Shown here: positions 1-53,501 of the stretch, one piece after another
Layout: every line of letters begins with the position of its first letter
How positions within the stretch are numbered: the first letter of the stretch is position 1
Source of the DNA: Mytilus trossulus
Taxonomy: Eukaryota
NCBI RefSeq assembly: GCF_036588685.1
Contig: NC_086382.1
Location: forward strand, 73,470,001 to 73,534,000
Length of the DNA stretch: 64,000 nt
Direction: 5' to 3'
Position numbers and translations under genes: made by a program
Notes under the pieces: generated by a model
What the model saw: the letters and a program-made list of their open reading frames with translations, nothing else
What the model was told of the DNA's origin: nothing
Database searches by the model: none

Positions 1-357
1 AAATAAAAAAATAACTGAACATAACACATATATTTATTCTTGATATAAATCTTTCCATTCATAAATTTTAGATTAACATGCAAACCATGCACTTTTCCTA
101 GAAATGAACAATGTTATGTATTTATACAACTTATGTACATTATACATTGAAAAAGATGATATAAAACAATTGAAGGGCCCAACTTAATTTAATTCTAAGG
201 AACATATATATACATGAATTATTTTTTTTGTGTGGACATGTACTTGAAAGAAAAGTACATTGTACATCCGTTTTTGTCATGTTATATCATAATTTTTTTT
301 TATCCATGTAATGTAAAAATTACATTATTTTTGTTTGTATTTTATTCATATACTTAC

Positions 358-3300
358 TTGGACGCTGACAAAATATTGGTGACTTAATACCATAAAACTT
401 CATACTGCGCCCTGGAGGAGGTAATGGTACTTCATATAAAACATTGTAAATATACGATTCTAATGATAACTCTATTTCTGTTGGATTTAATACAGCACTA
501 TGTAACTGTTGTAAAAACTGCTGAGTCGGCTGAACAAATGGTTGCTGAGTAATTAAACAAAAACATTTTGTCACATACAGTCTATCCTTGTTGGATTTGT
601 AAATTTTCAAATCGTCAATTGTCCTTTTCTTTGTAGTACCAGGACTAAATCTAAGATTCCCTCCTACTTGTTCAATATGTAGAGTGTCTGACACATCAGT
701 TTCAACCTCTGCTAGGAACATGTGTTGTAATGTCTGCATGGCAGCCAAGATTTTGTCATCTGTAACTTCCTCGTAATAAATAAATGCAGACCCATATGTT
801 CTGGTTCCATCTTCCCTAGTAATGATAAACGAATGAAAGTCTGGCTGTCTGTCAGCTTTCTGTATACAAAAGGATAAACCTCTTGGGAAACTGAGCTAAA
901 AATTAAACAGACAAAAAATAAACTATATTGAACATGTTGAAGAAACTTAATTACTTAAAATGAAACAAATGTTAATTAAAAGAATTTATTAAAGAAATCT
1001 TCACAAATTTCCTCAAGTCATTTTACATTTTTATGTGTAATAGTGTGTGATATCTTTATGTGTAACAGTGTGTGATATCTTTAATATGCAGATATTTGCT
1101 GAGACACACTGTTTATATGACTTAGTTACATGTATTTTATTTACTGGATTATATTACCATTTTACAGACAAGTTCGTCACCAACATGTATCTATTCTTTC
1201 AAATTATATTTTGAATAAACATTATAAAAATTATAATCATACTAAATAACTATTGATGAATCTTTCCCTTTTAATTTACAAGTATGAGTAAAAAGATTGT
1301 TATTACATTCAAAGACGACATGTACAAATGCATCATGGCTTAGAATTTCAATTATTGCCCTTCAAAATATTTAAAACTAATTTAAATTTTCATTATGAAC
1401 ATAGACTCATAGTTTTAAAGATTTTATTTCCAAAGTAACATAATTCCAAGTCAATATGATGTTTTATTTAGTTGAATACCAGAACACATTACCAAATAAC
1501 TAATTTCAGATGGTAAAGTTACTATATATATATTGGATTTATGCTGTCTCTTTATAGAGATTATAAAACACCAGCTTGGCAGTTTGTTAAGTAAATATTA
1601 GGATCACAGGACTGAAGTTTAATTTAACACTGGTTTCAGCTAAACCTCTTAGCAATGTAAACTACTTTTCTTCAGAGCGATAATTTTCAAAACAATTATC
1701 TACAACATGTACAAGTAGTATTGCAAACTGTATGATTTAATTTTGTGTCATGAACAGCAATGTTTAATTGTATATATCATTACCATCCCAACAGCTACTT
1801 TGTCGAATGCATTCCATGGCACTGATTCAGGATAATGATCCAATACCTTGGACTTATAAGGACGATCTAAAGGAGGACACTGCAAATGTTCACCTAAAAA
1901 TATATTAAAAAAATCATTTTAAATTCCTTCCTTCATACATGTATATGTCTATATCAAAACAAACCTTGAATGTAGTATTCCTTCCTACATATATGTCAAG
2001 TATTTCACTCAATAAGTGTAAAATATGACAGTTGTCATTTCCTGGCCTGTATATCAGAGGTTTAGGCAAATGACAGTCAGGGGTACTACTTGTACAAATA
2101 TTTCTTCATTTGGATTTGTACTGATTGAAAATTTAGTCTTAGATGCATGATTTTTTTTTATTAGTCATGAACTAGTTGTCAGTAACTGTGAGTACTCTCT
2201 GATCAGTACTAATCGTCTTTTTGTTGTTGGGAAATATATACAAGTACGTGGCCATGTTCACTCTGTGCTATTGTTAGATGTATTTCTATTTGTATCCATC
2301 TGATGAATTAACCCTTTTGCAACTGTTTTTTTTTAGTAATAGTTTGTTCTTATGTTGTACTGTTATACCACTGTCCCAGGTTAGGGGGAGGGTTGGAATC
2401 CCGCTTACATGTTTAACCCAGCAACATTCTTTATGTATGCAGCCTCTAATTCAGCGATTGTCTTTTGTTGATATGTTACATATTTGTTTTTTCTTTCGTT
2501 TTTTTGTGCATAAATAAGGCTGTTTAATAGTTTTCTCGTTTGAATTGTTATACATTTGACATTTTATTTCCTTTTAAAGCTGACTATGTGGTATTGGCTT
2601 TGATCAGTGGCCGTACAGTGACCTATAGTTGTAAATTTCTGTGTTATTTGGACTCTTGTGAATAGTTGTCATTGACAATCAGGGTTTCCGCTGGCGGTCG
2701 CCATTTTCGCAATTTGCGAAAAAATAATAATTGTGGCGATTAAAATTCGTCATTGGCGAAAGAATTTGGCGAAAGAAATATATATAACGATTTATTTTCA
2801 GCCATCTTGTTTATTTACTTTTTTCGGGTTTCTCTGACTTTCAATGACTTTTCCGATCAGACAATACTCGGAATTCACCTTGAACTCGTTAAGATTTTGA
2901 CAGAAAATCAATAATCAGCTGATTGCATTCAAAGCTGTCGACATCAAAGGACGAATTAATAAAGGTGTTGATTGTATGATGTGACAAAATTATATGATTA
3001 AATGGCTTCTGTCACATGTCACAAAAGGGATTTATTGACCACTTTGCAACGCACATGTTTGAAGCAAAATTTTTACGCTTCCTCTCCTTCTTTTAATGAT
3101 AGTGCAGAAAGGTCTCTGATTTAAAACTTTATCATTTAACTTTCATGTAGATCATTGATTTTAGTGGGTACTTCAAAGTCGTTTCAGTTACACACGTGTT
3201 TCAAAGCATATAGTTTTACTTATGAATTTATGTACGATGGTCTAGAAAAGAAAACTGTTGTTATGAAGAAATCTATTTAAAAGGTTGGCATGAGAGTAAC

Positions 3301-20557: not shown

Positions 20558-27871
<7,314 letters not shown>

Positions 27872-28230
27872 TTTTACCAGCAATAAACTAAGAAATTCAG
27901 TTCTTTTTTGGTTAATGTGTCGTCTAAAATCTCGTGATTGCAGTCGACCTCAAAAACTATGACGTATTTCACATTTTGGAACTTCCGCTTTAGAACAGAC
28001 GAAAGTTTTTGTCGAAAGAGAAGTATTCTGCTTGATATGACGATAAGAATGGAGACTGTTACAAACTAAAATCACCGGTAAAGATAATAAATCAAATACC
28101 GCTAGATATTTATCGCAAATTTGCATATAAAAAAAAGTTTCTAAATGGGTCGCACACACTGCTGATAATGATTGGAATCAACACAGTAACACTATATAAA
28201 TTTTGCTGGTAAAACTTGTTTCCGGGTAAC
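27872..28230. promoter_or_regulatory. Putative bidirectional promoter ATP6V1E/BCL2L13
   Basis: CpG-richer segment between the divergent genes, with TCTCGTGA, a TGACGT half-CRE (~27960) and ETS-like ACTTCCG (~27981). The BCL2L13 ATG exon has an acceptor at 29818, so a non-coding first exon is expected here. Confidence 0.55.
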
Positions 28231-28681: not shown

Positions 28682-29839
28682 GTTCAAGAGGTACAGATTC
28701 TTTGGTCAAATGGTAATATCCAGTGTTTCAAAACTAATAGTCTTAAGGCTTTTATATGAGTAAAGGAATTAGAACAAAAATCACCAAATCACCCCACACC
28801 AAATCGCCCCACTTTTTCACCAACTCGACCCACTTTTAAAAAAATTGCCTTACTCTGGTTTACCAACTCGCCCCAAAGAAAGGCAAATTTTCTACAGCAG
28901 ACAGCATACTGAACTATCTAATGACATTCTATGTTATACCATTCTATTCATTAGGGTTTGAATTTATATTGAATCTTCCACCATTTGGCTGTTATGCTAA
29001 ATATTTTGTCATGAACAGTAATGCGATTGGTAAATAATGGTAAGGTATCAGCATTTTGAAAAATACTATTATAATGATTATAGCCCTATTTTACTTCATA
29101 TCATAGTATTCATGGAATTTGGGAATCTAAGAAACTTCAAGTCTTGAACATGTTGAATTATTGACGTCATATATGACAATCACTTTTCCTTTGTGGCTTC
29201 GCACATTCTCTATTGCAACATCTAAATGTTTAGATAACCTTTGTAATGTCCAGTAATTACAATCAAATATTGATAAGGTTGCCTTCAACAAAAGACCTTA
29301 TCACTATTTTGAAATCTGCTACTGTTAACTGAGAATCTGCATCTCTTGAACAATTGATATCATACAAAAATCACTTTTCCATTGTGGTGTCAGATGTTTA
29401 ATTATAGCCAGCATTTAAAGGCACTGACATAAAAAATGTGAGGCTATATATTTAAACAAGAAAACCATGAAAACTAATGATTTGATTTATAGCAATTCAA
29501 TTTACAAAACTATAAAGTATGACACATGTGACAGACATGAACCAAAGACAAGCACTCAATTACAGGTTGCAATAATTGCTTTTGGGGTTCAAAAATTAAA
29601 CAGCATACTTTTTCAGGATCTATAGATAAAGGATTTATGGCATTTAAAAGGATAATTGATCCATCATGGAAAAAAAAAAAATTCATGAGATTATAGTGTC
29701 AGATGATGATTAGTCATTAAAAGGCCCATTTTAATTACCTAAAGACAAAATTATTCAAAAACTTTTTTTATACAATCAAGTAATTTTACATTGATAATAT
29801 GTATGTCTATTTTTACAGGATTAGAATGATGATAAGACG

Positions 29840-32800
29840 ATGGCAAGCAAGGAACTACATCATTCCAACAAATCATTCAGTCCATCAACAGATACCTCCA
29901 GTCCTTCACCCGAAAGTTTTGCGTTTGAAACCAAATTTATTGTCCTGAATTTTATTGGTCAGAATCCACACGAAAGACATCCTGGCTGTGTTTATTCATC
30001 TACCACATCAAGTGCTGCATCAGACTCGAATCCATTTCCTTTCCATTCTAAGAAAGGTCATCAGTCCTTTCCAACATCACCACGGAAACTAGTTAAAACA
30101 CATAAACTAGGTCATTTAGATTCATCATTTCATGCCTCAGAGGACAATGTAAATTATAAATATAAAAAAGAACACAAGAAGTTAAATGAGCCATCTGTAG
30201 AACCATTCCAAGGACATTTAGGTGACAGCCAACCTACTAAATCATCATCTGCTGATAAAATTCATGATAAAAGACATTTTAAATCAGTCTCCCTTGATCA
30301 TGGTTTAAACCAGGGCAGATACTTTCAGGAATCTGATAGTTCCCCAGTTACTGATGTTGATAAGCCATTTGTTTCTGGAAGTACCCCCTTCTTGAACTAC
30401 AGACGATCTAGAGTAGAAAGCGAGTTGAGTAGTGAAGTAGGTAATTTGAGTTACACTAGTGATGCTGATGATGAGTATGAGTCCACTACATCCAGTTTGT
30501 TTAGCAGTTTTACTGAGCCAGGTGGACGTGGCAGCAGAGATCAAAGGTTGTCTATTGTGAAGAGTGAGAGTGAATTAGAAACTGATGTTAGCACAGTGGC
30601 TGGAGACATTTCTACTGATGGAGTTGGTCTGGAAGACGATATCTTTCATGAAGAACAACCTATGTTTAGAGAAGTACAATATTGCATAGCACAGACTGGA
30701 AATGAGGGAAAATTATCTACGCATTCCAATCATGCAACTGAAAATTTACAGTCACCTACAGAAAATCTTCCATCCAGTAATGAAAAGTTAGGAGTAACTG
30801 AATCAGAGAGTGTATCCTTAGATATTGGAAGCAGTAGTGGTACAACAGATCGATCAGCCGATCGTAGCAAGTTACGCTTAGTTATTAGAGACCAGCAGGA
30901 ATGGGAAGAAGAACAGAGAACAGAGATTCGTCAAGTCCTTTCCACTGTACAAGATGAAGTCAATACACAGATGCTGTTTCTGGAATCAGAAGTTGATGAG
31001 GGTAATTACTAAATAGTCTGAAGCACATCCTTTATTTTAAGTTTATGCTGATAAAAGATGATCATGATGATACTTGATGAAGGATGCACAAAAAATATTC
31101 ACCATTTCGTCTTCTAGTATTGTCTAGTCCAAATTGAGAATGAATTTTTCAGATCATTGTAATAAGATTAAACAAGATAAAATAGTTCTTAAAAGTTGTG
31201 TATTTCTATTAATTTTCATTTCTTAATTTTTTGAGGAAAATAAAACCAGTTTTATTTCTCTTATGACTTTTGAAATTTAACTTGAAACAACAATTTGAAC
31301 ATAACATTGCATGATATTTTGACTATAGAAATGATATCATAGATGACTTTATTTAAGTATTACAATGTATTATGAATTCCAAATATGTTTGAATTTTTAA
31401 ACAATTCAATGACCTTTCTTTTATTGTCATACTTAATAACTCTTACACTGTTTCTCTCTGATATATAACCAATCATAACTGTTTTTCTTCAGCTATAAGA
31501 AGACATCTGATTACTCCTGGAGAATCCCCTTTTATTGCCCCATTGTCTCCCCATACTGAAGCAGCCATGACCTTAGCCAGAATTGGTGACGAGATAAAGG
31601 ATTTCTATGGTGATCGTTTGACTACAGCAGTGGCAGGTCTGTGTACAGAAGAACAAACTGTTGTCTCCTATGAAAATTTCAGATGTGTTGCTTGTTCTGT
31701 GATTGACCAAGAAGTTCCAGGCTGGAGACAAGTATGTTTAACTATGGCAAACAACAACAAAAAGCACTACCAGTAGAAATATATTATTTAGCATGAAATA
31801 GGTCTTTGTTAGTCTTGTATTATTTTAGTTTTAGTTTCTTGTGTACAATTTGGAAATTAGTATGACGTTCATTATCACTGAACTACCGGTAGTATATATT
31901 TGTTAAGGGGCCAGCTGAAGGACGCCTCTGGGTGCGGGAATTTCTCGCTACATTGAAAACCTGTTGGTGACCTCCTGCTGTTGTTTTTTCTATGGTTGGG
32001 TTGTTGTCTCTTTTACACATTCCCCATTTCCATTCTCAATTTTATTTAAACAACACACACTGTTTGTTAGTCTCTTTAAAGATTGATTACTTTATTAAAG
32101 TGTATTACATACTGTCAGGGGTACTACTTGTACCTGAGGAAAATTGATAAAGGCATGTTTTTACATCTAAAAACTTGAGAATTTTTGTGGGATTTTTGTA
32201 AAAAAAAAATTAAGAAAATTAATTATATAAGGGGAGATTATTCAAACATTATAATTAAGTTAATATATAAGTTTATTTTATTTACGGGTAATTCTTGAAG
32301 TAAATAAAAAATACTTGTACACATAGTACCCCTGACTGACATACCTGTATAGTAGTTGGCTTAATTTACTTTAGACATGTTTAAGTTCAAAATCTGTTTT
32401 ATTGCTTTCAACAAAAATCTTTTTACCTGTTTGCCCTTATTCTCAGTTATATTATTTTTACTTTATATATTTACTTTATTTTTACTTTATATATTTAAGA
32501 AATTATTGATGCAAGCTATACTTTATTGTAGTTTTAACATGGGCAAATGATGGGTAGGCATTATATTCATGATTATTATTGCCCAATTAGCAATAGTGAG
32601 GGCTAAAATAACTCAAATGTAATGCCTACCCATGTTAAAACTACATAAGTATAGCTTGCATCAGTTATTTTGATTCAGATTAGGACAATTAAGGTAATTT
32701 CTATGTCAAATGTGTATAAGTGTAAACATAAAATATTTGCCACTCATATTATGCAAACCGCAATCACACAATAACTTTTTGAAATATTTTATTTAAACAT

Positions 32801-34813
32801 GATATCAAACGATTTTTTTTTTATAAGAGTTGAATGCTTATTGTTTGATTAACAAACACAATTACTGTTTTGTCTATATAACAGTACAAACTTTTGCATT
32901 TTTTAGGTAGCTTTACTGTTGGTGTATGGACAAAGTGTAGCCTGGAGAGTAGCAGAGTTTGGGTACACTGAGTTTGGACATCTGGTAAACAACACAGTCA
33001 GATTGATCTCAGAATTATACTCAGACTTTATCACATCACAAGGAGGATGGGTAAGGGGAAATAACCACCATAGGATAAGGTCTTTCATGTTCTTTAACAT
33101 TGAATATGTAAATATCCACCCTAAAGGTGACATGTATAAAACACACCACATTTTTAAAGTTGGCAAACTCATTTTTATAGAAGTAAAGGTATATGAACAT
33201 GTAAGGAGATGTAATAGTATTGCCGATAAGATAATTATCCACCAAAGTTCAAATGAAGTGGATTTTAGCAAATAAAGGCAACCTTATAGCCTTAAAAAAT
33301 GAGAAAAAGCATTCCCTATAGTCAGCAAAAATATGTAGCAACTCGATTGAAGAAACTAATAAACTACATCAACCACTGAAAAACAGCCTCCTTAATTGAG
33401 ACAGGGTTGTATATGTTTGTGAGCGCTCAACCCTCCCCATAATTGGGAAAATGGTGTTACAGCACAACAACAAAAAAACACCACTAAGTTGAGATCTGAG
33501 AGTACTCACAGTTACTGACAGCTAGTCAAAAGCCAATATCTACAATTAAAAACAGTTATGAATCTTATACTAAACTATCAATCAGTACACATCCAATATC
33601 CAATTGATTTAGGTTAAAGATGTCATTAACAGTCAAGAGAAAAACATGACCTTGGGCAATGCCAAAATATAGGTAACAACAGATTGTAGTACCATGACAG
33701 TGAATATGTTTATATACTATTCTGTTTGAAAGTAGTTTTCTATAGGTACATGTAATAAAAAATATAAAAATATAATGAATTTTCCTTAACATTCATCTTC
33801 TATCATGTTTAATGTTTAATGTTCTTCAGGGAGCTGTAATGCAGTATGATTCCAGCCTGTCATCCTCTATCAGTCCACATAATAGTTCCTCAGAAAACAC
33901 TTCACCTCGAGAAGAGCTTGATCAAATTACTGAAGACATAAAATTTGTAACTTTTGGACAAGACAAAGCATCTGTAAATCACAAGATTTCTATACAAGAT
34001 AAATCTTCTGGAGATCACATGACTTTTGTACCCCCACCAGATGAGTCTGCTTGCGATCAAATCATTAATGAAAATCATCATTCTCATGATGAACACAAAA
34101 CAATATCATTGGCTGATATACTTATGACCTTTTCAGCTTCTGAAAATAATCAAATAAATGGTGAATCATCAGATAAATCAGCTGACTGTCATGTGACATT
34201 TAAACCACCCATGGACGAGTGTGCACAATTCAGGATCACTGATGATACAGAAAACAATAATTCATTAAAACCATTAGCAGAAGAAGATAATCATACAGTT
34301 TCTAGTCCTGATGAAAGCCAAGGGAGCGAATCAGACCACAATATTAATCAAAGTACTTGTTTACCTCCAAAAAATGATCAATTTATTTCTCAGCATAATG
34401 CATGTAATGGCAGTTGTTCTTCTAGTGATCTCCCTCCCAGCAGCAATCATAATGATGCCAGTAACATTAGTATTTCTGACAATGATTCTCATGAGGGATC
34501 AGAGAGAGGAGACTCTGATAGTACTGTCTTATTTGTTCAGAGAAATAGTTCGTCTAACAATAACACATCTCACCAGGAGACTGTAGAAAGTCAAACTCAG
34601 CATGGGGATATACCTCCAGACCAGATGATAGAATATGAAGAGACTTCAGACATATCACTCAATGGTGACCATCACGCACACTTTCATTATAAGACACAGT
34701 CGAGTGATGAGAGTTCTGACATCTTCGCAAGATTTTTCAGCATCAGAACTCTTGCTACTTTAGGAGTGTGTGCTGTTGGTATCATTGTTACTATCGCTAC
34801 TTCTCGAAGATAG
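29840..34813 (+). CDS. BCL2L13: Bcl-2-like protein 13 (Bcl-rambo)-type Bcl-2 family protein, ~842 aa
   Basis: Exons 29840-31001, 31493-31731, 32907-33050 and 33830-34813, 2529 nt in frame. BH4-like FAFETKFIVLNFIG (cf. vertebrate FHYETKYVVLSYLG), BH3 LARIGDEI, BH1-like PGWRQVALLL, and BH2 FITSQGGW with the family-typical intron right after W. A long acidic insert separates BH2 from the C-terminal tail anchor TLATLGVCAVGIIVTIATSRR. The gene lies head-to-head with ATP6V1E. Confidence 0.85.
32506..32663. mobile_element. Fold-back MITE in BCL2L13 intron
   Basis: TGATGCAAGCTATACTT..TGTAGTTTTAACATGGG...CCCATGTTAAAACTACATAAGTATAGCTTGCATCA. Confidence 0.7.
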
Positions 34814-35864
34814 CTATTCCACATTCCATATTTATATTTGATCAAAAGTTTGATTATTTTTCATATACCGTATATTAGAAAGAAAAAACTTTGTGCATAA
34901 GAAAGGAGGTTAGAATTTATACCAAATCCCTAATGGTTTTTTATATTTATCATTTTGCACTAAATAAAAAAATAAAACAGCATTTTAACATTTGCCCTTT
35001 TACCATGTTTACACGTCTAAACTGTTTTTTTCAATATTTTCATTTTTTTTAGGCTAACCATATAAATGATTATAAAGTAAAAAAATGCCTGAATTTGTTA
35101 TCAATGTACAGTTCAGTAGTTTCTTTGGTTTTAAAGCAAATCATAGCTTGAGCTGCACCAAAAAAAAACAACAATTGTTTGCCAAATGATATCTTGAAAT
35201 TATTTGATCATTTTCTATATGGATATCACAACACATATTTTTTTTTTCAGCAGAAAGCATATCTAAAAACTGCATCCCAGTCCAGTATGTTGTTTAAATC
35301 AAAGTTTTCCACCTGTGATGCTATTGAATTCTTATTGGACTTAAAACTTAAAATGTTTGTAAAATAAAATGATCACTGATTATTTTTTATTTTTTTTTCA
35401 TTACCTTAATTATTTTGTTTACATAACTTATGGACAAGGTTGTGAACAGTTTGTAAAGCTTTAAAACATCAAAAAATTGAACAAAAATTATGATCTTGAT
35501 AAAGAAAGTAATTTTGTTGATGATCTATTAGCCAGAAATAAAAATCAAATAGTTTCAGTTAAGTGATATATTATTCGGATATAGTTTAGTCACTTCCCTT
35601 TGAGCTTTGGAATTTGATGATTGCTTTAAATGTGCATTGTTTTCTGCTTTGCTGTGTACAGTTTAGTAATTTGTTAACTTTTCTCTTATTCATGTTATTC
35701 TTGACATTTACATGTTTTGTTTAATATGTGAGCATTCCAAAATGAGCATTAAGTGTTTTACTCTGTTGAGTATTTATCAATATGTTATTTTGTTATATTT
35801 GTTAAATATATTTATATATTATGTAAAAACTTATTCGTGTAAATTTAGCTAGATTAAGTTTTAA

Positions 35865-38914: not shown

Positions 38915-39206
38915 AAATAGTTATCAAAAGTACCAGCATTATAATTTAGTGTGCCAGACGCGCGTTTCGTCTACATAAAAATTCATCAGTGACGCTCAAA
39001 TCGAAATATTAATAAAGCCAAACAAGTACAAAGTTGAAGAGCATTGAGGATCCAAAATTCCAAAAAGTTTTGCCAAATATGGCTAAGGTAATCTATGTCT
39101 GGAATAAGAAAACCCTTAGTTTTTCGAAAAATTCAAAGTTTTGTAAACAGGAAATTTATAAAAATGACCACATGATTGATATTCATGTCAACACCGAAAT
39201 GTTGAC
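38915..39206 (-). repeat. Hammerhead-ribozyme-bearing interspersed repeat
   Basis: Same family as 51400-51676 and 50749-50882. HHR core at 38951-38995 with a weakened stem II. Confidence 0.75.
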
Positions 39207-39208
39207 CT

Positions 39209-40502
39209 TAAAAGAGGGACGAAAGATACCAGAGGGACAGTCAAACTCATAAATCGAAAATAAACTGACAACGCCATGGCTAAAAATGAAAAAGACAAAC
39301 AGACAAACAATAGTACACATGACATAACATAGAAAACTAAAGAATAAACAAAACGAACCCACAAAAAACAAGGGGTGATCTCAGGTGCTCCGGAAGGGTA
39401 AGCAGACCCTGCTCCACATGTGGCACCCGTCGTGTTACTTATGTGATAAATCATCCGGTAAATAGTCTAATTCGGTAGGTCACATTCATGAAAGGGAAGA
39501 GGTTTGTAGTTACGACGTAAGGAACATATCCGATATCATTTGTGAAACGGTTATTCAATAACGGTCAACCAACTCGTGATGGCGTCCGTAAAATTTACGA
39601 AGTGATGATTTCAACTTCACCATTTGGAACTCTTGGTTTAATAGCTTCCTTGTGATCAGCGACCCTCTATCAAGGAAATCATGGTAGGAAATGCAAGCAC
39701 GGGAATATCGTATCAATTGGGAGATATATACACCGTATGCAGGTGCTGCTGGAATGTTGCTACTTAGAAATGGAAAGTTCACAATTGGAAAGCTGAAATC
39801 ATCTCTATTGTCGTTAAGTTTTGTTTTCAACCGACCCTCATTGTCAATTTTTTAGATGTAAGTCAAGATATTAGGCCGACGTAACTGTATTTGTAGTATC
39901 CTTTATATCTAGTTCGATGGAATAGATGCGTTAGTCATCAAATTTTGAATTATTTAGTGAAAGAACATCATCTATATAGCGGAAAGTAGAGTTAAAGGAT
40001 ATTGCTAACTTCTTATCTTTCTTCCTAAAAAGTTCCTGTATGAAGTCAGCCTCATAATAATATAGAAACAAGTCGGCAAGAAGAGGGACACAATTTGTTC
40101 CCATTGGAATGCCAACAGTCTGCTGAAAAACACGTCCTCCCAACGTAACAAATATGTTGTCAATCAAGAAATCAAGCATTTTGATAATGTCAGTTTCAGA
40201 GAATTTTTTTGTTTGAATCAGAGTGATCTTTTACAAAGTAAGATATATCCCTCCTTAAGACAATATACTTGTATCTACGTTGGCCATTCTTTTTTATGAA
40301 ACAAAGCAATACCAACTCTTTCAATTTGTATTTTAGTTTGGAATGTTGAATACTTGCGTAAAGTGTAAAAAAGTCAAATATTTTAATACTATTACATGAT
40401 GAAAGAGAGTTAGATTGTATGTACTCTTAAAGATCTTTGGAAATTTTGAGTATCCCAATCTGATTCACGTCACCTCTAGAATAGGAAGTTTCACAATAAC
40501 TA
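39209..40502 (-). mobile_element. Decayed Penelope-like retroelement (RT core, thumb, 3' tail)
   Basis: RT motifs FDFYTLYASI, QTVGIPMGTNCVPLLADLFL and FRYIDDVLS, followed by the DDFSFPIVNFPFLSSNIP thumb. Contains frameshifts and stops. Confidence 0.85.

Positions 40503-41867: not shown

Positions 41868-53501
<11,634 letters not shown>

What the first reader, a model, noticed from the sequence alone, without database searches (positions are those of the whole stretch)
29840..33050. Mollusc Bcl-rambo carries BID-like features: a candidate pre-duplication BCL2L13/BID ancestor linking caspase-8 to mitochondria
Seen in sequence: between the BH4-like helix (FETKFIVLNFIG) and the Bcl-2 core there is a ~300-aa Ser/acidic low-complexity loop. 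It contains ESELETD|V (30572-30586) and DISTD|G (30605-30622), followed by a strong BH3, TLARIGDEI (31573-31596). Established knowledge: vertebrate BID is activated by caspase-8 cleavage at an ELQTD|G-type site in a loop upstream of its BH3 (mouse BH3 LAQIGDEM). Human BCL2L13 has a degenerate BH3 (LAHLGEKV) and no such long loop, and BID lies next to BCL2L13 and ATP6V1E1 in mammals. Inference: this tail-anchored protein may be a caspase-8-cleavable BH3 activator doing the BID job in a lineage where BID is generally regarded as absent, and it may resemble the ancestor of both genes.
Basis: partly seen in the sequence, partly recalled or inferred. Interest (0 to 1): 0.85.

Follow-up and report, generated by a model that had tools for sequence, protein, structure and literature searches.

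The report
Mussel BCL2L13 gene with long loop
This is the mussel copy of the mitochondrial Bcl-2-family gene BCL2L13 (Bcl-rambo), with an unusually long floppy loop and an intact BH3 "death" helix. The two caspase-like cut sites that suggested a BID-like role are real, but they occur only in mussels and one freshwater mussel, so the BID-ancestor idea is not supported.

Summary
A single-copy, four-exon gene (29840-34813, + strand, 842 aa) encodes a BH4-like helix, a 300-aa Ser/acidic disordered loop containing LETD|V and ISTD|G, a canonical BH3 (LARIGDEI), a Bcl-2 core, a 307-aa BHNo-like region and a tail anchor. It lies head-to-head with ATP6V1E, as BCL2L13 is placed in human. Source databases already name mollusc orthologues BCL2L13.

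The BID reading does not hold up:
- **BH3.** It matches BAX, BIM and BAK (6 of 8 residues) better than human BID (4 of 8).
- **Sequence.** A profile of 20 mollusc sequences hits BAK (E 1.7e-9) and never BID, even at E up to 10.
- **Fold.** The predicted core matches BAK at Z 15.8 and BID at Z 5.3.
- **Conservation.** LETD occurs only in mytilids (LETD, METD, LDTD) and one unionid (FETD). Scallops, oysters, venerids, Solemya and gastropods lack it. The conserved block (RLxTVxSESE-hydrophobic) ends at the P4 residue.

Other lineages carry DExD|G-type sites near the same place. [quoted passage not shown] A complex model supports BH3 docking into a mussel Bcl-2-like groove (0.67; best control 0.23). 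I could not retrieve vertebrate BCL2L13 or BID sequences, so no phylogeny was built.

The parts
29840..31001 (+). Coding exon 1 (aa 1-387, phase 1 at its end): start codon, BH4-like helix, 300-aa disordered loop, and the start of a long helix before the BH3.
   Evidence: ORF and splice donor GG|gtaatt. P0024 residues 1-388 match here at 97% identity.
29924..29959 (+). BH4-like helix FETKFIVLNFIG (aa 29-40). It is helix alpha-1 of the Bcl-2 fold.
   Evidence: F, E, T, K, L and F are invariant in 20-22 mollusc sequences. AF2 predicts a helix at 24-39 with pLDDT 68-83. Structural alignments to BAK, BOK and Bcl-xL start at model residues 21-27.
30065..30088 (+). SFPTSPRK (aa 76-83), a conserved S-x-P-x-SP-x-K block. 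It looks like a proline-directed kinase site (inference).
   Evidence: The alignment consensus reads SxPxSPxxR/K.
30452..30481 (+). YTSDADDEYE (aa 205-214), the best conserved short motif in the loop.
   Evidence: Mean column conservation is 0.69. D, A and D are nearly invariant.
30545..30586 (+). RLSIVKSESELETD (aa 236-249): the conserved block RL-x-T-V-x-SESE-hydrophobic, followed by the mytilid-specific ETD. This is candidate caspase site 1, LETD|V.
   Evidence: Conservation stops at L246, the P4 residue. The aligned residues are METD and LDTD in other mytilid-like sequences, FETD in Potamilus, MENE in scallops, MESE in Solemya, TEQE in Gigantopelta and PEPD in Haliotis. Oysters have no counterpart.
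30605..30622 (+). DISTDG (aa 256-261), candidate caspase site 2, ISTD|G.
   Evidence: It is present in Mytilus spp. P0015 has FSSD|G and P0002 has lost it. Many other lineages have DxxD|G in the same part of the loop, but the homology is uncertain.
30860..30880 (+). DRSKLRL (aa 341-347), a conserved block that ends the disordered loop. A long helix follows.
   Evidence: D, R, L and L are invariant. AF2 predicts a helix at 352-391.
31493..31731 (+). Coding exon 2 (aa 388-467): the BH3 helix and the region up to PGWRQ, the BH1 position.
   Evidence: Acceptor ttcag|CT and donor CAA|gtatgt. P0024 residues 386-473 match at 92% identity.
31573..31596 (+). BH3 core LARIGDEI (aa 415-422).
   Evidence: A, L, A, I, G and D are invariant in all aligned mollusc sequences. 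The BH3 helix is modelled into the groove of a mussel Bcl-2-like protein, with G/D touching the G/R of NWGR.
32907..33050 (+). Coding exon 3 (aa 468-515): the central helices up to the BH2 motif QGGW. The intron follows directly after the Trp codon.
   Evidence: Pfam Bcl-2 matches profile positions 52-100 on this exon alone. The same GGW|GT intron position is seen in five other Bcl-2-family loci of this genome.
33830..34813 (+). Coding exon 4 (aa 516-842 plus stop): a 307-aa BHNo-like disordered region (S 17.9%, D 10.1%, N 8.5%), the tail anchor, and the final SRR.
   Evidence: ORF, composition, AF2 pLDDT below 50 over 521-813.
34010..34237 (+). Two copies of an internal repeat in the BHNo-like region (aa 576-593 and 633-651), of the form H-x-TF-x-PP-x-DE-x-A.
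   Evidence: Read from the translation. Function unknown.
34748..34804 (+). C-terminal transmembrane anchor (aa 822-840), flanked by R before it and RR after it.
   Evidence: AF2 predicts a helix at 812-843 with pLDDT 72-86. Sequence.
21458..27949 (-). V-ATPase subunit E gene (ATP6V1E), head-to-head with the Bcl-rambo-like gene. Its start codon ([11 protein letters not shown]) is near 27870.
   Evidence: Pfam vATP-synt_E hits fall at window 21530-21625, 23570-23680 and 25265-25378 on the minus strand. Exon ORFs were read.

Best explanation
The gene is the single-copy mussel orthologue of BCL2L13 (Bcl-rambo). It encodes a protein anchored by its C-terminal helix, most likely in the mitochondrial outer membrane as shown for the mammalian protein, with the rest facing the cytosol.

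Its folded part is a canonical multi-motif Bcl-2 bundle of BAK/BOK type. That bundle is built from an N-terminal helix (aa 24-39) and helices spanning aa 352-520. The two parts are separated by a 300-aa disordered loop that is present in all sampled molluscs.

The loop most likely acts as a regulatory tether. It carries several short conserved acidic/Ser and Ser-Pro motifs that look like phosphorylation or docking sites. [quoted passage not shown]

Unlike human BCL2L13, the BH3 is canonical and strictly conserved. It is predicted to fit the groove of a mussel pro-survival Bcl-2 protein. The mollusc protein is therefore probably still an active partner in Bcl-2-family BH3-in-groove interactions at the membrane.

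LETD|V and ISTD|G are elaborations specific to the mussel lineage, placed just after a conserved SESE block. They may be caspase sites whose cleavage would remove helix alpha-1. They are not ancestral, not specific to caspase-8 and not a BID signature.

Shown here: gene structure, single copy, fold class, conservation pattern, synteny. Inferred: membrane location, phospho-regulation, BH3 activity, any cleavage.
For: **Gene model and copy number**
- Four GT-AG exons, each matched by P0024 and nowhere else in the genome.
- Uninterrupted 842-857-aa products on 2.7-3.3-kb Logan contigs imply spliced transcripts in related mussels.

**Family**
- Pfam Bcl-2 matches 1-100/100 at or above the curated cut-off in five orthologues.
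- The BH2 intron follows GGW, as in the genome's other Bcl-2 genes.

**BCL2L13 identity**
- The order is BH4-like, BH3, BH1, BH2, then a 307-aa Ser/acidic region, then the TM. This is the architecture described for BCL-RAMBO (PMC9800997).
- Sources name the M. coruscus protein 'BCL2L13' and the Mizuhopecten protein 'Bcl-2-like protein 13'.
- ATP6V1E lies head-to-head with it, beside the human order ATP6V1E1-BCL2L13-BID (PMC11472575).
- Bcl-RAMBO orthologues are already reported in a coral (PMC4715348) and Bcl2L13 in a squid (PMC9389742).

**Fold**
- VIA-align gives BAK Z 15.8 (rmsd 2.4, 140 residues aligned), BOK 15.5 and Bcl-xL 14.6. Foldseek ranks BAK first at E 2e-4.
- The genome has its own BAK elsewhere.

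**Loop**
- pLDDT is below 50 over residues 45-340, with conserved blocks at aa 76-83, 100-108, 205-218, 236-246 and 340-348.

**BH3**
- Six positions are invariant in 22 sequences.
- The complex model scored 0.67 against a best control of 0.23. That mark was reached by 51 of 78 solved complexes and 2 of 108 mismatched pairs. The three runs agree in at least 80% of contacts, and the partner's pLDDT is at least 68.
Against: - Orthology to vertebrate BCL2L13 was not tested by alignment or tree. Three database searches returned only molluscs.
- Among solved structures the best sequence match is BAK, so a BAK-derived paralogue is not formally excluded.
- The BHNo-like region of the Mytilus protein contains no [WFY]xx[LIV] motif, so the mammalian LIR has no counterpart.
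- The BH1 NWGR motif is replaced by PGWRQ.
- The complex score may reflect memory of the many solved BH3-in-groove complexes. In the folded protein the BH3 is part of the bundle and may never be exposed.
- The ESM Atlas put BCL2L15/BID clusters nearest to the core, at 0.76-0.78. That is below the level random sequences often reach.
- No expression or localisation data exist for this species.
Confidence: 0.6

Rival explanations
1. The protein does BID's job in molluscs. A DED-caspase (caspase-8-like) cuts the loop at LETD|V or ISTD|G. This frees a tail-anchored fragment whose BH3 activates BAX/BAK. The protein would resemble the common ancestor of BCL2L13 and BID.
For: - LETD is the textbook caspase-8 optimum (my own knowledge) and is rare by chance in this loop (P about 0.011).
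- Both sites lie in a disordered stretch, upstream of a canonical BH3 that models into a Bcl-2 groove.
- Molluscs have FADD and DED-caspases (PMC11463336), but no BID or other BH3-only protein has been found (PMC5550854, PMC9389742). BID first appears in jawed vertebrates (PMC8998228), next to BCL2L13 (PMC11472575).
- Pfam BID found nothing in this genome.
- The ESM Atlas's nearest clusters carry the BID family label, though at a weak 0.76-0.78.
Against: - LETD and its variants are confined to mytilids plus Potamilus. At the same place scallops have MENE, Solemya has MESE, Gigantopelta has TEQE, and oysters have nothing. The conserved block ends at P4.
- ISTD|G is found in mytilids only.
- P1' is Val at site 1, which is less favourable than Gly, Ser or Ala (my own knowledge).
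- The BH3 is closer to BAX, BIM and BAK than to human BID (6 of 8 against 4 of 8 residues; motifs from PMC9171138).
- No BID hit appeared by profile search even at E up to 10 or by Pfam.
- BID scores only Z 5.3 against 15.8 for BAK.
- Cleavage at D249 would still leave about 100 aa of loop and a 40-residue helix in front of the BH3.
- The Pfam BID genome search had no positive control, so it cannot show absence.
Confidence: 0.1
2. The loop is a substrate of executioner (caspase-3/7-like) caspases. Removing helix alpha-1 (BH4-like) would convert the protein into a more active pro-death form. [quoted passage not shown]
For: - Close to or downstream of the SESE block many lineages carry DxxD followed by a small residue. 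Examples: DEPD|G and DEAD|G (venerids), DEVD|G (P0033, Mactra), DEVD|S (P0011), DEVD|A (Saccostrea), DDVD|G (Solemya), DVVD|G (Haliotis) and DDID|G (Gigantopelta).
- After masking the conserved SDADDE block, DxxD[GSA] occurs 15 times against 4 for its mirror image in 17 loops.
- The position between alpha-1 and the BH3 is where Bcl-2 and Bcl-xL are cut (my own knowledge).
Against: - The lineages are related, so 15 against 4 overstates independence. Several venerid sites are a single event.
- The sites do not fall in one alignment column.
- Acidic patches generate such strings easily. Before masking, the mirror pattern was as frequent as the forward one.
- Mytilus, scallops and Potamilus have no DxxD[GSA] in the loop.
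- The D-G-hydrophobic-hydrophobic context could instead be a docking motif.
Confidence: 0.2
3. It acts mainly as a mitophagy and mitochondrial-fragmentation receptor like mammalian BCL2L13. The disordered regions would recruit ATG8 or ULK1-complex proteins, and the Bcl-2 core would have no apoptotic partner.
For: - Orthology and shared architecture with BCL-RAMBO, which is a mitophagy receptor and was reported not to bind 13 other Bcl-2-family proteins (PMC9800997).
- The acidic/Ser motifs (SDADDE[YF]E and SESE-hydrophobic-E) resemble the phospho-regulated acidic stretches around LIR- and FIP200-binding motifs. This is inference only.
Against: - The BHNo-like region of the Mytilus protein has no [WFY]xx[LIV] core at all. 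No acidic-context LIR candidate is conserved among 13 orthologues.
- The strict conservation of a canonical BH3, which is degenerate in human, argues that BH3-dependent contacts are kept.
Confidence: 0.25
4. It is a divergent BAK-type pore-forming effector rather than a BCL2L13 orthologue.
For: - BAK is the best match both by sequence profile (E 1.7e-9) and by structure (Z 15.8; Foldseek rank 1).
- It has a canonical BH3 and a tail anchor.
Against: - The genome has a separate true BAK whose BH3 stretch is identical to human BAK in VGRQLAIIGDDI (human motif from PMC9171138).
- 307 aa separate BH2 from the TM.
- NWGR is not conserved.
- The intron inside BH1 differs from the BAK locus.
- The gene shows ATP6V1E synteny and is named BCL2L13 by sources.
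- No BCL2L13 structure exists in the PDB to compete with BAK in these searches.
Confidence: 0.07

Closest known systems
Vertebrate BCL2L13 / BCL-RAMBO (human Q9BXK5, 485 aa)
   Same: - BH4-like N-terminal helix, then BH3, BH1 and BH2, then a long Ser/acidic region with no BH motifs, then a C-terminal TM with basic flanks (PMC9800997).
- The neighbour is ATP6V1E(1).
- The BH3 position shares the L-A-x-x-G skeleton with human LAHLGEKV (PMC9171138).
   Different: - About 300 extra disordered residues sit between the BH4-like helix and the rest of the core. The human BH3 is at residues 100-111; here it is at 415-422.
- The BH3 is canonical (GDE instead of GEK) and invariant across molluscs.
- No WxxI-type LIR is present in the BHNo-like region.
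- Direct sequence comparison with the vertebrate protein could not be run.
BAK (BAK1)
   Same: It is the best sequence-profile and structural match. The BH3 is LAIIGDDI against LARIGDEI here. It is also a tail-anchored mitochondrial protein.
   Different: - In BAK the TM follows BH2 directly, the loop is short, and BH1 is NWGR.
- The mussel genome has its own BAK 12 Mb away on the same contig.
BID
   Same: - A flexible loop with an (L/I)xTD-type site lies upstream of a BH3. In BID this is LQTD|G (my own knowledge).
- It is the genomic neighbour of BCL2L13 in human.
- Weak ESM Atlas proximity (0.76-0.78).
   Different: - BID has no TM, BH1, BH2 or BH4.
- No Pfam BID or HMM similarity was found.
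- Structural Z is 5.3 against 15.8 for BAK.
- The site is not conserved outside mussels.
- Human BID's BH3 (LAQVGDSM) shares only 4 of 8 residues.
[quoted passage not shown]
   Same: These are disordered loops between helix alpha-1 (BH4) and the BH3 helix. They carry Ser/Thr-Pro phosphosites (PMC9171138) and caspase sites whose cleavage removes BH4 (my own knowledge).
   Different: Those loops are about 30-60 aa long (or a PEST region in Mcl-1). Here the loop is 300 aa and has its own conserved motifs.
Coral AmBcl-RAMBO (Acropora millepora)
   Same: It is an invertebrate Bcl-2-family protein that groups with vertebrate BCL2L13 (PMC4715348).

Membership tests
BCL2L13 / Bcl-rambo | Bcl-2 family domain (Pfam PF00452) covering BH3-BH1-BH2 | tested here: met
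   The domain matches 1-100/100 at 31.4-48 bits (cut-off 31.4) in P0001, P0008, P0010, P0006 and P0015. Exon 3 of the window alone matches profile positions 52-100.
BCL2L13 / Bcl-rambo | Long region without BH motifs (BHNo, Ser/Glu-rich) between BH2 and the C-terminal TM anchor | tested here: met
   There are 307 aa between GGW and the TM (S 17.9%, D 10.1%, E 7.5%). The region is disordered in AF2, and the TM helix spans 812-843. Definition taken from PMC9800997.
BCL2L13 / Bcl-rambo | Groups with vertebrate BCL2L13 in a phylogeny or as a reciprocal best hit | not testable with these tools
   Three homologous-protein searches and one full HMMER scan returned molluscs only. The PDB holds no BCL2L13 core. 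The only support is the names given by source databases.
BCL2L13 / Bcl-rambo | Adjacent to ATP6V1E1 (microsynteny) | tested here: met
   V-ATPase E exons lie at 21.5-27.9 kb on the minus strand, divergent from the gene. The human order ATP6V1E1-BCL2L13-BID comes from PMC11472575. The human head-to-head orientation is from my own knowledge.
BCL2L13 / Bcl-rambo | LIR motif (WQQI in human) in the BHNo domain | tested here: not met
   No [WFY]xx[LIV] occurs in aa 521-812 of the Mytilus protein. No candidate is conserved in 13 orthologues.
BID | Match to the BID family profile (Pfam PF06393) | tested here: not met
   No BID hit at E up to 1 on five orthologues or on the four exons. The profile search against the PDB at E up to 10 lists no BID chain.
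BID | BID-type fold: helical bundle without BH1/BH2 signatures and without a TM | tested here: not met
   Mouse BID 1ddb scores Z 5.3 with rmsd 8.5 at rank 44. BAK scores 15.8, BOK 15.5 and Bcl-xL 14.6. The protein has the BH2 GGW motif and a TM.
BID | Conserved caspase-8 site in the loop upstream of the BH3 | tested here: not met
   LETD, METD, LDTD and FETD occur only in mytilids and Potamilus. Scallops, oysters, venerids, Solemya and gastropods lack it. Actual cleavage cannot be tested here.
BAK | TM directly after BH2, NWGR in BH1, and a single orthologue per genome | tested here: not met
   There are 307 aa between BH2 and the TM, and BH1 reads PGWRQ. A separate BAK lies at G000:C10:61461203-61462402.

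The most novel reading that the evidence does not exclude
No BH3-only protein has been found in molluscs. In this phylum the tail-anchored BCL2L13 orthologue may be a caspase-activated BH3 donor. Cleavage in the giant loop would strip helix alpha-1 and expose a canonical BH3 at the mitochondrial surface. The sites would be LETD/ISTD in mussels and DExD|G in clams. The protein would then couple caspase activity to BAX/BAK, a functional analogue of BID. It might also reflect the state from which vertebrate BID arose next door.
Probability: 0.1. Interest if true: 0.75.

Novelty: new member of a known kind. Interest (0 to 1): 0.35.

Why it matters
How death-receptor or caspase signals reach mitochondria in molluscs is an open question. 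Molluscs have FADD, DED-caspases, BAX and BAK. No BID or other BH3-only protein has been found (PMC5550854, PMC9389742, PMC11463336).

This gene shows that the mollusc BCL2L13 orthologue keeps a canonical, strictly conserved BH3 and a BAK-like core. The human protein has a degenerate BH3 and no known Bcl-2-family partners. That suggests ancestral BCL2L13 took part in BH3-in-groove interactions and that the vertebrate protein lost this ability.

The 300-aa loop, with its five conserved short motifs, gives concrete and mutable targets for experiments. The specific BID-ancestor claim, which would have been the exciting part, is not borne out by conservation, sequence or fold.

Tried and rejected
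**Retrieving vertebrate BCL2L13 and BID**
With the full HMMER scan using exon 1, they gave molluscs only.
- No tree, hhalign or intron-phase comparison with BID or BCL2L13 was therefore possible.
- I remember the human N-terminus as very like FxxETK[YF]xVLx[FY], but I did not type it into any tool. It is a lead, not a test.

**Joined model**
- The joined 842-aa model was built only inside scripts, for coordinates and motif counts. It was not sent to any search or fold tool.
- Exons were searched by reference. The near-identical database proteins P0024 (93.8% identical) and P0001 served as proxies.

**Tools unavailable**
There is no direct read evidence for splicing in this species.

I re-ran it reading the locus file instead.

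**Weak or uninformative results**
- The Pfam BID six-frame search of the genome found nothing. Its control rang nowhere, so it does not show absence.
- The ESM Atlas put BCL2L15/BID clusters nearest at 0.76-0.78. With those clusters excluded there was no usable hit. This is below the noise level quoted by the tool, so I treat it as a weak lead only.
- [ILVD]ExD looked enriched against uniform shuffles (20 observed against 6.8 expected). The enrichment largely vanished against the mirror-pattern control (20 against 12).
- DxxD[GSA] stays asymmetric (15 against 4) only after masking the conserved SDADDE block.

**Other checks**
- The downstream 29 kb has no BID-like or Bcl-2-like ORF. It holds only a reverse-transcriptase fragment.
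- The N-myristoylation consensus after ISTD|G fails, because Glu sits at position 5 of GVGLED (checked by eye).

Full report
**What is there**

The window is AT-rich animal DNA (GC about 0.32). It lies at G000:C10:73.47 Mb of a 1.30-Gb assembly.

Reading 29700-35000 and the ORF list gives a four-exon coding model on the + strand: 29840-31001, 31493-31731, 32907-33050 and 33830-34813. All borders are GT-AG, and the product is 842 aa. An acceptor at 29818 shows that a 5' UTR exon lies further upstream.

The M. galloprovincialis protein P0024 (844 aa) matches exactly these four pieces at 97, 92, 96 and 89% identity, and matches nothing else in the genome. The gene is therefore single-copy and the model is sound. 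Overall identity of the model is 93.8% to P0024 and 87% to M. californianus P0001. The source is a Mytilus-group mussel.

Uninterrupted 842-857-aa products on 2.7-3.3-kb Logan contigs imply spliced mRNAs in related mussels.

All searches used exon references or the database proteins P0024 and P0001.

**The observation**

- FETKFIVLNFIG at aa 29-40
- ELETD|V at aa 245-249 (30572-30586)
- DISTD|G at aa 256-261 (30605-30622)
- LARIGDEI at aa 415-422 (31573-31596)

The loop between the first helix and the DRSKLRL block is 300 aa, rich in S, E, T and D. AlphaFold2 predicts it disordered. The finding's end at 33050 is the GGW|gt intron. A fourth exon adds a 307-aa Ser/Asp/Asn-rich region and a tail anchor.

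Shuffling the loop gives [LI]ETD in 1.1% of trials. A broad caspase-like pattern reaches the observed count in 20%.

**Which family**

Pfam Bcl-2 covers its whole profile in five orthologues, at or above the curated cut-off.

The intron right after the BH2 Trp codon is shared with the genome's other Bcl-2 genes. Their open frames all read GGW followed by a GT codon.

The AlphaFold2 model of P0024, built with 22 aligned mollusc sequences, has confident helices at 24-39, 352-391, 407-437, 447-457, 464-484, 491-511, 515-520 and 812-843. Everything else has pLDDT below 50.

VIA-align against 48,161 PDB representatives gave these matches:

| Match | Z | Detail |
|---|---|---|
| BAK | 15.8 | rmsd 2.4, 140 residues aligned, 25% identity |
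| BOK | 15.5 | |
| Trichoplax Bcl-2L2 | 14.7 | |
| Bcl-xL | 14.6 | |
| Mcl-1 | 14.2 | |
| BFK (BCL2L15) | 13.1 | |
| mouse BID | 5.3 | rmsd 8.5, rank 44 |

Foldseek likewise ranks BAK first and Mcl-1 next. The alignments start at model residues 21-27. The N-terminal BH4-like helix is therefore helix alpha-1 of the bundle, and the 300 aa form an expanded alpha1-alpha2 loop.

**BCL2L13 rather than BAK**

A profile of 20 mollusc sequences hits BAK chains in the PDB (E 1.7e-9). It hits no BID chain even at E up to 10.

The genome nevertheless has a true BAK at C10:61.46 Mb, whose BH3 stretch is identical to human BAK. It also has BAX-like, Bcl-2-like and Mcl-1-like loci.

The gene in the window differs from BAK in three ways. 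BH2 and the TM are separated by 307 aa, BH1 reads PGWRQ, and the protein has the BHNo-type architecture that defines BCL-RAMBO (PMC9800997).

Sources already call the M. coruscus protein BCL2L13 and the Mizuhopecten protein Bcl-2-like protein 13. Bcl2L13 has been listed in a squid transcriptome (PMC9389742), and a Bcl-RAMBO orthologue has been described in a coral (PMC4715348).

The V-ATPase E gene lies divergently upstream. Pfam hits fall at window 21.5-25.4 kb and the start codon is near 27870. The human order is ATP6V1E1-BCL2L13-BID-MICAL3 (PMC11472575).

I could not obtain any vertebrate BCL2L13 sequence. Orthology therefore rests on architecture, synteny and database names, not on a tree.

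**Are the BID-like features BID-like?**

BH3. Motifs tabulated in PMC9171138 compare with LARIGDEI as follows:

| Protein | BH3 core | Identity to LARIGDEI |
|---|---|---|
| BAX | LKRIGDEL | 6/8 |
| BIM | LRRIGDEF | 6/8 |
| BAK | LAIIGDDI | 6/8 |
| BOK | LLRLGDEL | 5/8 |
| human BID | LAQVGDSM | 4/8 |
| human BCL2L13 | LAHLGEKV | 3/8 |

The motif is simply canonical. It is invariant at six positions in 22 mollusc sequences.

A complex model of the BH3 stretch (exon 2 residues 15-46) with a mussel Bcl-2-like protein (L005:4056-4526, residues 10-150) supports binding:
- Score 0.67, best of 3 controls 0.23.
- The mark was reached by 51 of 78 solved complexes and 2 of 108 mismatched pairs.
- On eukaryotes it was reached by 39 of 65 solved pairs with no like older complex, and by 2 of 126 unrelated pairs.
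- The three runs agree in at least 80% of contacts, and the partner's pLDDT is at least 68.
- The Gly and Asp of the BH3 touch the G and R of NWGR.

BH3-in-groove complexes are abundant in the PDB, so this may show likeness rather than binding.

Cut sites. Alignments of bivalve and gastropod orthologues (A1, A2 and a local E-INS-i alignment) show that LETD sits at the end of a conserved block, RL-x-T-V-x-SESE-hydrophobic-E. Conservation stops at the P4 residue. The residues after the block are:
- ETD in Mytilus
- METD and LDTD in two other mytilid-like sequences
- FETD in the unionid Potamilus
- MENE in three scallops
- MESE in Solemya
- TEQE in Gigantopelta
- PEPD in Haliotis
- DMDE-type strings in venerids
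- nothing comparable in oysters

ISTD|G is found in mytilids only.

A new point came out of this work. Many lineages carry DxxD followed by a small residue close to or downstream of the same block:
- DEPD|G and DEAD|G in venerids
- DEVD|G in P0033 and Mactra
- DEVD|S in P0011
- DEVD|A in Saccostrea
- DDVD|G in Solemya
- DVVD|G in Haliotis
- DDID|G in Gigantopelta

After masking the conserved SDADDE block, the pattern occurs 15 times against 4 for its mirror image. Relatedness and the acidic composition weaken this, and the sites do not share one alignment column.

It still leaves room for the loop being a caspase substrate in several lineages. That would be of the executioner type, as in the alpha1-alpha2 loops of Bcl-2 and Bcl-xL (my own knowledge), rather than a caspase-8 to BID-type link.

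BID elsewhere. Pfam BID found nothing in six frames of the genome, but the control rang nowhere, so this is not proof of absence. The 29 kb downstream, where BID sits in human, shows only a reverse-transcriptase fragment. The literature places the origin of BID in jawed vertebrates (PMC8998228).

The ESM Atlas put BCL2L15/BID-labelled clusters nearest to the core, at 0.76-0.78. Nothing usable remained when those clusters were excluded. The tool states that random sequences reach 0.8 a third of the time, so this is only a faint lead.

**Most likely mechanism**

The protein is a tail-anchored outer-membrane Bcl-2-fold protein. Its alpha-1 helix is tethered to the bundle by a long regulatory disordered loop. 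The conserved loop motifs are:
- S-x-P-x-SP-x-K (aa 76-83)
- SEDNxxY.Y (aa 100-108)
- Y-x-SDADDE-[YF]-E (aa 205-214)
- the SESE block (aa 236-246)
- DRSKLRL (aa 341-347)

These look like kinase and docking sites (inference).

The strictly conserved canonical BH3 suggests that mollusc BCL2L13 still engages Bcl-2-family grooves. The human protein does not: it has no reported partners among 13 family members (PMC9800997).

The mammalian LIR has no counterpart, because no [WFY]xx[LIV] occurs in the BHNo-like region. A mitophagy-receptor role would therefore need other motifs.

**Verdict**

This is a real, correctly read gene and a reasonable hypothesis. The BID-specific parts fail the tests that could be run. 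It is a mollusc member of the known BCL2L13 family, with a lineage-specific giant loop and an intact BH3. Interest is moderate. The caspase-activated BH3-donor reading keeps a probability of about 0.1.

**Tools unavailable**

Noticed in passing
window 21458-27949 (-): The V-ATPase subunit E gene (ATP6V1E) lies head-to-head with the BCL2L13-like gene. The two start codons are about 2 kb apart (near 27870 and at 29840), which suggests a shared bidirectional promoter. This is the same pairing as human ATP6V1E1-BCL2L13.
   Followed up: partly
window 30065-30088, 30137-30163, 30452-30481, 30545-30577, 30860-30880: Five short motifs in the otherwise fast-evolving 300-aa loop are conserved from protobranch bivalves to gastropods: S-x-P-x-SP-x-K, SEDNxxY.Y, Y-x-SDADDE-[YF]-E, RL-x-T-V-x-SESE-hydrophobic-E and DRSKLRL. 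Their partners are unknown.
   Followed up: partly
orthologues P0029, P0035, P0042, P0033, P0039, P0011, P0036, P0027, P0031, P0010 (loop, after the SESE block): DExD|G-type strings recur in clams, an oyster, Solemya and gastropods (DEPD|G, DEAD|G, DEVD|G, DEVD|S, DEVD|A, DDVD|G, DVVD|G, DDID|G). They are often followed by two hydrophobic residues. They could be executioner-caspase sites or a docking motif.
   Followed up: partly
window 34010-34063 and 34181-34237 (+): There are two copies of an 18-19-aa repeat (H-x-TF-x-PP-x-DE-x-A...) in the BHNo-like region. From my own memory, human Bcl-rambo also has a tandem repeat in its BHNo domain, with a different sequence.
   Followed up: no
G000:C10:52875654-52875881 (L002:401-706): A divergent Bcl-2-family exon on the same contig lacks NWGR (it reads IGWQQLAM) and ends in NQGGW|GT. 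It is 25% identical to the BCL2L13-like core over 75 aa. Its best PDB match is Bcl-xL, at only E 5e-4. The subfamily is unassigned.
   Followed up: partly
G000:C10:61461203-61462402 (L001): This is the mussel BAK orthologue. Its BH3 stretch QVGRQLAIIGDDINRRY is identical to human BAK over the tabulated 12-mer. It lies on the same contig, 12 Mb from the BCL2L13-like gene.
   Followed up: partly
G000:C2:19905608-19909704 (L005): Two Bcl-2/Bcl-xL-like genes sit in tandem, 3.8 kb apart. Each has its BH4-to-BH2 region in one exon.
   Followed up: no
window 320-748 (-): An exon encodes the start of a DENN domain (Pfam PF02141, E 1.9e-13). It belongs to a neighbouring gene at the left edge of the window.
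   Followed up: no
window 39555-40179 (-): These are reverse-transcriptase-like ORF fragments (RVT_1, weak at E 0.0024) from a degraded retroelement downstream of the gene. Similar short hydrophobic ORFs recur at 39188-39454 and 48793-49020.
   Followed up: no
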